A stretch of 64,000 nucleotides of DNA from Octopus sinensis. Its lineage: Eukaryota. The number at the start of each line of letters is the position of its first letter. Within the stretch, counting starts at the first letter, position 1. The position numbers and the translations under genes were made by a program. Where the stretch lies: contig NW_021836303.1 in NCBI RefSeq assembly GCF_006345805.1, positions 1 through 64,000 of the forward strand. Direction: 5' to 3'. This document shows, piece by piece, positions 9,283 through 10,342 of this stretch. The notes beneath the pieces were generated by a model. The model was not told the origin of the DNA. It was given only the letters and a program-made list of their open reading frames with translations, and searched no databases.

Positions 9283-9287
<5 letters not shown>

Positions 9288-9821
9288 TTTAACAATTAAG
9301 GATAATCTCTTAATAAGGGATCTTAACAAGAAATTATCGGGTAGCTAGCGTGAAAACCTCATAAAAGAAAAGAATTCGAAAATAATTTTTTTCTTTTGAA
9401 CAAATTAATTATATCTATATGTATAGAGGGCATTATTACACATAAATGCCTCACACTAGGAGGGACAAAGTCATTACTACCAAAATTACACTAATCATAC
9501 CCAAATGCAGTTTTTCAAAGCAAGACATTTAAAAAATGAATTTAGTTCTGTATCACCGTGATTTCACATTCAACTTACGTCTAATGATCGTCAGCAGAAC
9601 TGATTCTGAACACATCATAAATAAACTACCAACCTTACGTAGCGAAGACGAACAGACATCTATTCACTCCGGCCAAGCACATGGAATGTTTATAAATCAT
9701 ATATCCGGTAAATGGCGGGCTTTTTACGAACTGCATGTCGGGTAATGAAAAGTATTTCGGAATAAGTTTAACAATTAAGGATAATCTCTTAATAAGCGAT
9801 CTTAACAAGAAATTATCGGGT
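9283..9821 (-). mobile_element. Retrozyme-like element, copy 1 (479-nt monomer + 60-nt redundancy)
   Basis: 9283-9342 is repeated at 9762-9821; contains a hammerhead on the minus strand; its 3' end abuts (TA)n at 9245-9284. Confidence 0.8.
9544..9601 (-). ncRNA. Type I hammerhead ribozyme
   Basis: Exact reverse complement of 10157-10214. Confidence 0.85.
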
Positions 9822-10334
9822 GTGAGGCATTTATGTGTAATAATGCCCTCTATACAATATAGATATAATTAATTTGTTCAAAAGAAAAAAAAATTATTTT
9901 CGAATTCTTTTCTTTTATGAGGTTTTCACGCTAGCTACCCGATAATTTCTTGTTAAGATCCCTTATTAAGAGATTATCCTTAATTGTTAAACTTATTCCG
10001 AAATACTTTTCATTACCCGACATGCAGTTCGTAAAAAGCCCGCCATTTACCGGATATATGATTTATAAACATTCCATGTGCTTGGCCGGAGTGAGCAGTT
10101 GTCAGTTCGTCTTCGCTACGTAAGGTTGGTAGTTTATTTATGATGTGTTCAGAATCAGTTCTGCTGACGATCATTAGACGTAAGTTGAATGTGAAATCAC
10201 GGTGATACAGAACTAAATTCATTTTTTTAAATGTCTTGCTTGAAAAACTGCATTTGGGTATGATTAGTATAATTTTGGTAGTAATGACTTTGTCCCTCCT
10301 AGTGTGAGGCATTATGTGTAATAATGCCCTCTAT

Positions 10335-10342
<8 letters not shown>
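9820..10342 (+). mobile_element. Retrozyme-like element, copy 2 (inverted; ~482-nt monomer + ~40-nt redundancy)
   Basis: 9820-9860 is repeated at 10302-10342. Reverse complement of copy 1 but opened at a different point; its 3' end runs into (TA)n. Confidence 0.8.
10157..10214 (+). ncRNA. Type I hammerhead ribozyme
   Basis: Stem I AGUUCUG/CAGAACU (7 bp); CUGACGA; stem II UCAUUAGAC-GUAA-GUUGAAUGU; GAAA; palindromic stem III UCAC-G-GUGA; UA. Predicted cleavage after 10207 (AUA). Confidence 0.85.

What the first reader, a model, noticed from the sequence alone, without database searches (positions are those of the whole stretch)
9283..10342. Two greater-than-unit-length, differently permuted copies of a ~480-nt monomer: footprint of a circular RNA template
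Seen: copy 1 is a 479-nt monomer plus a repeat of its first 60 nt. Copy 2 is the reverse complement, opened ~174 nt away, with ~40 nt of terminal redundancy. Each carries one hammerhead and no ORF of 60 aa or more on the ribozyme strand. The arms are head-to-head (2-nt GT overlap at 9820-9821) and both 3' ends run into (TA)n through short TA microhomology. Established: metazoan retrozymes and Penelope-like pLTRs carry type I hammerheads and can give circular RNAs. Inference: a ~480-nt circRNA was reverse transcribed past one full turn twice, primed from both strands of one broken (TA)n tract, probably by a Penelope-like RT in trans. This could be an undescribed microsatellite-targeted retrozyme family.
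Basis: partly seen in the sequence, partly recalled or inferred. Interest (0 to 1): 0.92.

Follow-up and report, generated by a model that had tools for sequence, protein, structure and literature searches.

The report
Inverted twin hammerhead retrozyme insertion in (TA)n
A 1.06-kb stretch of an octopus genome holds two back-to-back, differently "rotated" copies of a ~480-base non-coding repeat with a self-cleaving hammerhead motif, sitting inside a TA microsatellite; it looks like a clean fossil of an already described kind of mobile element (animal retrozymes, moved by Penelope-like elements), not a new kind.

Summary
The described anatomy is real. Arm 1 (9283-9821) is a 479-nt unit plus 60 nt. 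Arm 2 (9820-10342) is the reverse complement, opened 174 nt away, a 481-nt unit plus about 40 nt. The arms meet head-to-head on a 2-nt GT overlap, and both outer ends run into 31-32-nt (TA)n tracts through 3- and 5-nt TA microhomology.

Each arm carries one type I hammerhead-like motif with a complete catalytic core. It is far from chance in my descriptor test but below Rfam's threshold (14.5 vs 34 bits). The strand with the hammerhead is also the strand that folds unusually well as a circle (z about -5.5 vs -2.4). It is also the strand whose 3' ends face the target, as target-primed reverse transcription predicts.

Best reading: one compound retro-insertion of a non-autonomous hammerhead element, primed from both ends of a cut (TA)n tract on a template without fixed ends (a circle or a multimer).

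This is not a new kind of element. Metazoan non-LTR retrozymes, the circRNA-to-tandem-cDNA model, the tandem-plus-inverted insertion architecture of Penelope-like elements and their (TA)n preference are all published. The circular template, the family and the targeting cannot be tested from one locus, and no other copy was reachable. The host is an Octopus. Verdict: new member of a known kind, moderate interest.

The parts
9254..9285 (.). Left half of the (TA)n target tract (32-nt perfect TA run). It either flanks the break or is one copy of a target-site duplication.
   Evidence: The right-hand tract has nearly the same length (31 nt).
9283..9821 (-). Arm 1: 539 nt = 479-nt unit + 60 nt (1.13 units). 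The RNA-sense (hammerhead) strand is the minus strand, with its 5' end at 9821 and its 3' end at 9283 against (TA)n.
   Evidence: (D9).
9762..9821 (-). Terminal redundancy of arm 1 (repeats 9283-9342, 59/60 identical), a mini pseudo-LTR.
   Evidence: D9.
9544..9601 (-). Type I hammerhead-like motif of arm 1. Predicted cleavage lies between 9551 and 9550.
   Evidence: Identical in sequence to the arm-2 motif.
9820..9821 (.). Head-to-head junction: a 2-nt GT shared by the 5' ends of both arms.
   Evidence: read directly.
9820..10342 (+). Arm 2: about 523 nt = 481-nt unit + about 40 nt (1.09 units). The sense strand is the plus strand, with its 3' end at about 10342 against (TA)n. It is opened 174 nt away from arm 1 on the unit.
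   Evidence: (D11, I1-I3).
10157..10214 (+). Type I hammerhead-like motif: helix I AGUUCUG/CAGAACU (extended by GAAU/AUUC), CUGACGA, helix II U-CAUU...AAUG-U, GAAA, helix III AUCA-cgg-UGAU, then A17|C. Predicted cleavage at 10207|10208.
10312..10348 (+). Terminal redundancy of arm 2 (repeats 9831-9867 at a spacing of 481), merging into (TA)n.
   Evidence: D11.
10338..10368 (.). Right half of the (TA)n target tract (31-nt perfect TA run).
10013..10312 (-). 99-aa ORF antisense to the ribozyme strand in arm 2 only. Probably not coding.
   Evidence: Split into 28 + 69 aa in arm 1. No homologue among 5.8 billion proteins.

Best explanation
Window 9283-10342 is one compound insertion of a ~480-nt, AT-rich, non-coding, hammerhead-bearing unit. 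The unit is a metazoan 'non-LTR retrozyme'-type non-autonomous retroelement, and the host is an Octopus genome.

Proposed mechanism:
1. A (TA)n tract was cut or broken.
2. Each of the two 3'-OH ends annealed, through 3-5 nt of UA/TA microhomology, to a different internal UA-rich site of the element's sense RNA.
3. Because the template had no fixed ends (a covalently closed monomer circle, or less likely an uncleaved multimer), each cDNA ran on for about 1.1 unit lengths, passing the hammerhead cleavage site seamlessly.
4. The two cDNA 3' ends then paired on 2 nt (GT/AC) and were filled in, giving two head-to-head arms with different permutations.

This is the tandem-plus-inverted architecture and the (TA)n preference typical of Penelope-like elements. 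A PLE RT/GIY-YIG endonuclease acting in trans is therefore the most likely machinery.

Shown: the geometry, the junction microhomologies, the hammerhead core motif, the strand-specific RNA fold and the absence of coding capacity.
Inferred: the RNA intermediate, the circular template, a single event and the PLE partner.

With one hammerhead per arm, the locus itself cannot release unit-length RNA and is probably a dead-end copy.
For: Geometry and permutation.

Three independent features point to the same strand as the RNA strand:
- The hammerhead motif. It hits only at 10157-10214(+) and 9544-9601(-), with chance about 5e-5 per unit. Rfam's best family for the site is Hammerhead_1.
- The circular fold. 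The sense strand scores z=-5.4/-6.0 with 67-68% of bases paired; the antisense strand scores z=-2.4.
- The 3'-ends-outward orientation required by target priming.

Other evidence:
- The outer junctions fall at TA runs of 3 and 5 nt, joint chance about 1e-3.
- (TA)>=5 tracts are only 2.1% of the window, so landing in one is not expected by chance.
- The cleavage-site sequence is continuous and identical in both arms, with no extra bases.
- Divergence inside each arm's terminal redundancy (2 differences in about 97 nt) matches divergence between the arms (11 in about 480 nt). This fits one event from one template sequence.
- GC is 33% and there is no ORF with homologues, as for metazoan retrozymes.

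Literature:
- Retrozyme model and PLE candidacy: PMC7229834.
- A U.U mismatch at the base of helix II occurs in the self-cleaving axolotl HHR_Amex2.
- PLE partial tandems, adjacent inverted 5'-truncated copies and (TA)n bias: PMC8557442.
- PLEs are present in Octopus vulgaris: PMC13282606.
Against: - Only one locus is available. No other copy exists in the window or in the searchable collections, so fixed versus scattered ends across a family could not be examined.
- The hammerhead is sub-threshold in Rfam (14.5 vs 34 bits).
- The hammerhead has a non-canonical U.U at positions 10.1/11.1.
- Its fold (-5.8 kcal/mol) is not the minimum free energy fold of the segment (-11.5). Activity is untested.
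- My descriptor was relaxed after I had seen the motif.
- Both arms stop at nearly the same length (1.09 and 1.13 units). The model does not explain this.
- Four of the six substitutions between the arms cluster within 12 nt. This could mean two different template molecules.
- There is no PLE ORF in the window, no recognisable 30-40-bp PLE 'tail', and no empty site to prove insertion.
Confidence: 0.68

Rival explanations
1. DNA-level remnant of a hammerhead satellite array. A tandem array of the 480-bp unit suffered an inversion, giving the head-to-head junction. It was then trimmed on both sides by microhomology-mediated deletions or recombination with neighbouring (TA)n tracts.
For: Hammerhead-bearing repeats do occur as tandem satellite-like arrays in animals. 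The region is extremely rich in microsatellites, which promote rearrangement. Microhomology junctions are also typical of end joining.
Against: This needs at least three independent events, against one for the insertion model. There are no further unit fragments anywhere in the window. Both outer ends lie in TA tracts of equal length (32 and 31 nt), as for a split or duplicated target. The orientation is specifically 3'-ends-out for the ribozyme strand, which a random inversion would give only half the time.
Confidence: 0.12
2. Two separate retro-insertions of the same element into one (TA)n tract at different times. The second landed in opposite orientation exactly at the 5' end of the first.
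For: A (TA)n-preferring machinery would hit the same tract repeatedly. The cluster of 4 substitutions within 12 nt between the arms could reflect different source copies.
Against: No TA repeat is left between the arms; they share a 2-nt junction. Inter-arm divergence (about 2.3%) equals the divergence within each arm's own redundancy (about 2%), which suggests the same age. Adjacent inverted copies are a known single-event product of PLE-type integration.
Confidence: 0.08
3. Assembly or sequencing artefact: a fold-back chimeric read or a mis-joined repeat produced the inversion.
For: Complex tandem/inverted PLE-type insertions are known to trouble assemblies. Five of the eleven differences between the arms are homopolymer-type indels.
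Against: A fold-back chimera gives a mirror palindrome around the junction. Here the arms are offset by about 115 nt (I1) and the junction is not self-complementary. The arms also differ by 6 substitutions. Both flanks are ordinary unique sequence plus TA tracts.
Confidence: 0.05
4. The hammerhead is a chance look-alike, and the element is another kind of repeat (foldback/MITE, Helitron-derived, or a hairpin small-RNA locus).
For: No Rfam hit at threshold. The 1-kb inverted repeat scores as a long-hairpin miRNA precursor (MIR8562) below threshold. A Helitron-type PIF1 helicase fragment lies 14 kb away.
Against: The ends are not inverted repeats of each other (AAGTTTAAC... vs ...CTATACAA). They are not the Helitron-type ends expected from general knowledge (5'-TC and 3'-CTRR). 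The full hammerhead core plus three helices has a chance expectation of about 5e-5 per unit and sits on the strand favoured by fold and geometry. The miRNA hits simply reflect the inverted arms.
Confidence: 0.04

Closest known systems
Metazoan non-LTR retrozymes (Cervera & de la Pena 2020, PMC7229834; Li, Clavereau & Pollet 2026 preprint, 10.64898/2026.07.22.740005)
   Same: Small, AT-rich (GC <45%), non-coding unit with a type I hammerhead. The predicted RNA is highly self-paired. Copies are longer than one unit. 'Solo' dispersed copies are known. The proposed route is circRNA to tandem cDNA, mobilised by PLEs.
   Different: The unit of 479-481 nt is slightly above the usual 150-450 bp. Each arm has only one hammerhead, so it is not a dimer or multimer. 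The two arms are inverted and differently permuted, and lie inside (TA)n; the papers read here do not describe this. No cephalopod example turned up in the literature searched.
Insertion architecture of Penelope-like elements (Neptune, Naiad, Hydra, Penelope/Poseidon; Craig et al. 2021, PMC8557442)
   Same: Partial tandem (pseudo-LTR) plus an adjacent inverted 5'-truncated copy joined head-to-head. A hammerhead lies in the repeated part. There is a (TA)n insertion bias. Hydra-clade PLEs combine canonical hammerheads with (TA)n targets and occur in molluscs.
   Different: No RT or GIY-YIG ORF; the whole unit is 480 nt. The two arms have different 3' ends on the unit, whereas copies of a linear PLE RNA share their 3' end. 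No 30-40-bp tail is visible.
L1 twin priming
   Same: Both 3'-OH ends of a cut target prime cDNA synthesis. The two cDNAs join by microhomology and leave an inversion.
   Different: In L1 the two segments are adjacent, essentially non-overlapping parts of one linear polyadenylated RNA. Here each arm holds more than a full unit, the arms overlap completely, and there is no poly(A).
Hammerhead satellite repeats of newts, schistosomes and cave crickets (cited in PMC7229834)
   Same: Repeats of a few hundred bp with a type I hammerhead, transcribed and self-cleaved.
   Different: Those are long head-to-tail arrays. This is an isolated inverted pair inside a microsatellite.
Plant LTR retrozymes (PMC4918200)
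   Same: Non-autonomous elements with hammerheads and a circRNA intermediate.
   Different: Those have type III hammerheads in real LTRs, a PBS and PPT, 4-bp TSDs, high GC and Gypsy-type mobilisation. None of these is present here.

Membership tests
Metazoan non-LTR retrozyme | Type I hammerhead ribozyme in every unit | tested here: inconclusive
   The core (CUGACGA, GAAA, A15.1-U16.1, A17) and three helices are complete in both arms, with chance about 5e-5 per unit. However, Rfam gives 14.5 bits against a gathering score of 34, there is a U.U at the base of helix II, and activity is untested.
Metazoan non-LTR retrozyme | Head-to-tail tandem repeats of 150-450 bp (dimers to multimers) | tested here: not met
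   Each arm holds 1.09-1.13 units of 479-481 nt with a single hammerhead. The arms correspond to 'solo/monomer' derivatives, not to an active dimer or multimer.
Metazoan non-LTR retrozyme | Low GC, no LTR/PBS/PPT, no protein coding | tested here: met
   GC is 33%. The longest sense ORF is 57 aa, and the 99-aa antisense ORF has no homologue.
Metazoan non-LTR retrozyme | Expressed as a self-paired circular RNA | not testable with these tools
   Indirect only: the circular fold of the sense strand scores z=-5.4 to -6.0 with 67-68% of bases paired.
Metazoan non-LTR retrozyme | Multicopy family in the genome | not testable with these tools
   No octopus genome could be searched. No copy was found in 64 kb, in 20 kb of O. 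vulgaris, or in the metagenome, prokaryote and viral collections.
Penelope-like element (autonomous) | ORF with a PLE-type RT and GIY-YIG endonuclease | tested here: not met
   The unit is 480 nt with no ORF that has homologues. The only RT in the window (18217-19083) is 87-92% identical in DNA to an Octopus vulgaris copy annotated only as a reverse-transcriptase-domain protein. It is unrelated in sequence to the unit.
PLE-type (PLE-mobilised) insertion | Partial tandem (pseudo-LTR) plus an adjacent inverted 5'-truncated copy | tested here: met
   Terminal redundancy of 60 nt and about 40 nt. The arms are head-to-head with their 5' ends joined, matching the description.
PLE-type (PLE-mobilised) insertion | Insertion into (TA)n (Neptune, Naiad and Hydra clades) | tested here: met
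   Both flanks are perfect TA tracts of 31-32 nt, and TA tracts are 2.1% of the window. This is one locus only, so no preference is demonstrated.
PLE-type (PLE-mobilised) insertion | 30-40-bp 'tail' extension at one end | tested here: not met
   Both arms pass directly from unit sequence into (TA)n. The tail is described as frequent, not obligatory.
L1-type twin priming | Inverted 5' part plus direct 3' part of one linear poly(A) RNA, essentially non-overlapping | tested here: not met
   The arms overlap over the whole unit and there is no poly(A). Only the dual-priming principle is shared.
Foldback/MITE or Helitron | Terminal inverted repeats with TSD, or 5'-TC...CTRR-3' ends with a 3' hairpin | tested here: not met
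   The ends AAGTTTAAC... and ...CTATACAA are neither complementary nor Helitron-like. The inverted repeat is internal and offset by 115 nt.

The most novel reading that the evidence does not exclude
The locus is a fossil of both ends of a broken (TA)n tract independently priming rolling-circle reverse transcription on a ~480-nt hammerhead circRNA. That would make it direct genomic evidence that retrozyme circles themselves are the templates for integration. It would also mark a previously unreported cephalopod retrozyme family that homes to TA microsatellites, possibly even without an endonuclease, as RT-mediated break repair.
Probability: 0.3. Interest if true: 0.6.

Novelty: new member of a known kind. 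Interest (0 to 1): 0.4.

Why it matters
How animal retrozymes get back into DNA is still a model rather than a demonstrated pathway. The papers read here say the circle 'should be' copied into tandem cDNA and that PLEs are 'strong candidates'.

A locus whose two arms start and stop at different points of the unit, each at a UA-rich site next to (TA)n, is the kind of footprint that separates an end-less template from a linear RNA with a fixed 3' end. It also ties retrozyme integration to the tandem/inverted, (TA)n-biased signature of PLEs.

If a genome-wide survey in Octopus showed many such loci with scattered ends, that would be useful mechanistic evidence and would add cephalopods to the hosts. 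As a single locus it illustrates published ideas and is not a discovery of a new system.

Tried and rejected
(1) Rfam at gathering threshold on the whole window gave nothing. At E<=10 on 1.25 kb it gave only hairpin/miRNA-like sub-threshold hits caused by the inverted arms and the TA tracts. Only a 101-nt query brought up Hammerhead_1, and weakly.

(2) The exact motif CTGATGA occurs 10 times in the window, as expected by chance, and never in the element. The element's core is CUGACGA.

(3) A 36-nt repeat with CTGATGA at 12410-12483 was checked as a possible minimal PLE hammerhead. No ribozyme match was found; it lies among SINE-like sequence.

(4) My first hammerhead descriptor had a loop-size bug and missed the true site. 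It was fixed.

(5) My first circular fold wrongly included part of arm 1 and gave an artefactual z of -21. It was redone with properly wrapped units.

(6) The 99-aa antisense ORF was searched against 5.8 billion proteins, hoping to reach other copies. There were no hits.

(7) Exact-pattern scans with hammerhead-region 21-mers gave nothing: metagenome contigs twice, prokaryotic genome contigs once, viral contigs once.

(8) Sampling the host genome through LINE RT homologues yielded one 20-kb O. vulgaris locus without the unit. The ENA contigs fetched this way share only 66-68% nucleotide identity over the RT and also lack the unit. I stopped this approach as unproductive.

(9) Single-cDNA snap-back (hairpin-primed) models were rejected. 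They predict that after 174 nt (or 413 nt) the second arm runs into flank or (TA)n, whereas it continues with unit sequence (reasoned).

(10) Compensatory change in the 4-substitution cluster was examined. The changes shorten an apical hairpin and do not preserve it, so no claim is made.

Full report
**What is there**

The segment 9283-10342 consists of two copies of one unit, and nothing else like it occurs in the 64-kb window (blastn; nhmmer).

- Arm 1 (9283-9821) is a 479-nt unit followed by a repeat of its first 60 nt, 59/60 identical (family D9).
- Arm 2 (9820-10342) is the reverse complement. Arm-1 positions 1-174 align to 9996-9820 at 98.3%, and positions 128-539 align to 10348-9937 at 97.3%. 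Its own terminal redundancy is 9831-9867 = 10312-10348 at a spacing of 481 (D11).
- On the circular unit the two arms are therefore opened 174 nt apart.
- The arms share exactly GT at 9820-9821. Arm 1 would go on with AGC, and arm 2 is preceded in the unit by CTA.
- Both outer ends pass into perfect TA tracts of 32 and 31 nt (9254-9285 and 10338-10368).

**The hammerhead**

On the plus strand of arm 2 (10157-10214), and identically on the minus strand of arm 1 (9544-9601), the sequence reads: AGUUCUG-CUGACGA-U-CAUU(12-nt loop)AAUG-U-GAAA-UCA(cgg)UGA-UA|CAGAACU.

- This is a full type I hammerhead core, with helix I of 7 bp (extended by GAAU/AUUC past a small internal loop), helix II of 4 bp above a U.U mismatch, and helix III of 4 bp.
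- Predicted cleavage is at 10207|10208 in arm 2 and 9551|9550 in arm 1.
- Rfam does not report it at its thresholds. In a 101-nt query Hammerhead_1 is the best family, but at only 14.5 bits against a gathering score of 34.
- A descriptor requiring the core and the three helices hits only these two sites in the window. It gave no hit in 20 Mb of random sequence with the window's dinucleotide statistics, and two hits in 20 Mb with the element's statistics. That is about 5e-5 expected per unit.
- I relaxed the descriptor (base mismatch in helix II) after seeing the motif, so the figure is somewhat optimistic. It is still far from chance.
- A U.U at the base of helix II is documented in the axolotl retrozyme ribozyme HHR_Amex2, which self-cleaves weakly as a monomer and well as a dimer (PMC7229834).
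- The hammerhead fold is not the minimum free energy fold of the isolated segment (-5.8 vs -11.5 kcal/mol). Activity remains to be tested.

**Which strand is the RNA**

Three independent observations agree.

- The hammerhead is on the strand whose 5' ends meet at the centre and whose 3' ends abut the TA tracts. This is the orientation target-primed reverse transcription must leave.
- Folded as a circle, that strand is far more stable than shuffles (z = -5.4 and -6.0 for the two units, 67-68% paired). The complement is not (z = -2.4).
- That strand has no ORF above 57 aa, and at most 62 stop-free codons on the circle.
- The complement carries a 99-aa ORF in arm 2. It is broken in arm 1 and has no homologue in 5.8 billion proteins. 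I regard it as non-coding.
- GC is 33%.

**Junctions**

- The 3' end of arm 1 coincides with a 3-nt TA run in the unit, and that of arm 2 with a 5-nt run.
- Only 6% and 0.8% of unit positions offer such runs, so the joint chance is about 1e-3.
- The two 3' ends lie about 130 nt apart on the unit, and the 5' ends about 117 nt apart.
- (TA)>=5 tracts make up 2.1% of the window, so landing in one by chance is unlikely. One locus cannot establish a preference.

**Mechanism**

The simplest account is a single event.

1. A (TA)n tract is nicked on both strands or broken.
2. Each 3'-OH anneals through UA microhomology to a different internal site of the sense RNA and primes cDNA synthesis.
3. Each cDNA runs about 1.1 unit lengths, crossing the cleavage site seamlessly. 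The sequence GGUGAUA|CAGAAC is identical in both arms with no added bases.
4. The two cDNA 3' ends pair on 2 nt and are filled in.

Further points:

- Different 3' ends and more-than-unit length require a template without fixed ends. A ligated circle is the most economical candidate, but an uncleaved multimeric transcript or end-to-end template jumping would give the same DNA.
- Single-cDNA snap-back models are excluded, because the second arm continues with unit sequence where they predict flank (reasoned).
- The arms differ by 6 substitutions and 5 homopolymer-type indels. This is about the same rate as the differences within each arm's own redundancy (2 in about 97 nt). That fits one event and later decay.
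- Four substitutions clustered within 12 nt are unexplained.
- Using the rate quoted for O. vulgaris repeats (JC 0.09 for about 25 My, PMC13282606), the insertion would be on the order of 1-3 My old. This is an inference.

**Rivals**

- A rearranged satellite array needs several events and leaves no other fragments.
- Two separate insertions would hardly abut without any TA repeat between them.
- A fold-back assembly artefact would be a mirror palindrome. Here the arms are offset by 115 nt and differ by substitutions.
- The element has neither terminal inverted repeats nor Helitron-type ends.

**Comparison with what is known**

- Metazoan non-LTR retrozymes are AT-rich, non-coding repeats of 150-450 bp with type I hammerheads, expressed as self-paired circRNAs. 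They are proposed to be copied into tandem cDNAs and integrated, with PLEs as the likely mobilisers (PMC7229834).
- A 2026 preprint argues that they derive from PLE pseudo-LTRs, and it describes dispersed 'solo' monomers.
- PLE insertions characteristically form partial tandems with an adjacent inverted 5'-truncated copy. Several clades prefer (TA)n. Hydra-clade PLEs combine canonical hammerheads with (TA)n insertion and occur in molluscs (PMC8557442).
- The locus therefore works like, and most probably is, a retrozyme-type passenger of PLE machinery.
- It fails the strict retrozyme criterion of tandem hammerheads, since there is one per arm. It is not an autonomous PLE.
- What I did not find described is a retrozyme locus with two inverted, differently permuted arms (no paper pairs 'retrozyme' with 'twin priming'), or any hammerhead element in cephalopods.

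**Host**

The LINE RT at 18217-19083 is 87% identical in protein to an Octopus vulgaris protein and 86-92% identical in DNA to chromosome OX597814.1. The window is therefore from Octopus vulgaris or a close relative.

**Limits**

- No octopus genome could be searched.
- Pattern scans of metagenome, prokaryote and viral collections were empty.
- Sampling through RT homologues gave one O. vulgaris locus and ENA contigs only 66-68% identical over the RT, none with the unit.

**Verdict**

This is a new member of a known kind, of moderate interest.

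Noticed in passing
window 10013-10312 (-); 9446-9532 and 9536-9745 (+): A 99-aa ORF runs antisense to the ribozyme strand in arm 2 (105 stop-free codons on the circle, unusual for 33% GC). In arm 1 it is split by indels into 28 + 69 aa. 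No homologue was found among 5.8 billion proteins.
   Followed up: yes
window 9729-10029 (whole element 9283-10342): The two arms form a near-perfect inverted repeat of about 1 kb. Rfam's sub-threshold MIR8562-type hits merely reflect this hairpin. If transcribed through, the locus would give long dsRNA, a possible small-RNA source.
   Followed up: partly
window 9254-9285 and 10338-10368: The perfect TA tracts on the two sides are almost the same length (32 and 31 nt). They could be a target-site duplication of a single (TA)16 tract, rather than the two halves of a longer tract.
   Followed up: no
window about 9640-9652 and 10094-10106: Four of the six substitutions between the arms cluster within 12 nt (GAATAGATGTCTG vs GAGCAGTTGTCAG), at the tip of a predicted hairpin. 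They are not compensatory. This could be one complex mutation, or a sign of two different template molecules.
   Followed up: partly
window 18217-19083 (-), with 19540-20094 (-): A retroelement RT ORF (Pfam RVT_1, E=6.5e-20; presumed LINE) with an upstream ORF. It is 86-92% identical in DNA to a copy on Octopus vulgaris chromosome OX597814.1, which identifies the host genus.
   Followed up: yes
window 24044-24526 (-), possibly with 24737-25318 and 26460-27104 (-): A PIF1-like helicase fragment (Pfam PF05970, E=4.7e-36), probably a Helitron remnant. It is unrelated to the element.
   Followed up: partly
window 32401-33622 and 33657-34875: A 1.22-kb tandem duplication at 99.3% identity. Each copy contains a 2.4-2.5-unit array of a 156-nt SINE/tRNA-like repeat (32497-32875 and 33741-34128).
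   Followed up: partly
window 38326-40598, 13845-14972, 3120-3935, 48724-49534: Very long trinucleotide arrays, such as (TAG)n of about 2.3 kb and (TAA)n of about 1.1 kb, together with dozens of di- and tetranucleotide tracts. The window is exceptionally rich in microsatellites.
   Followed up: no
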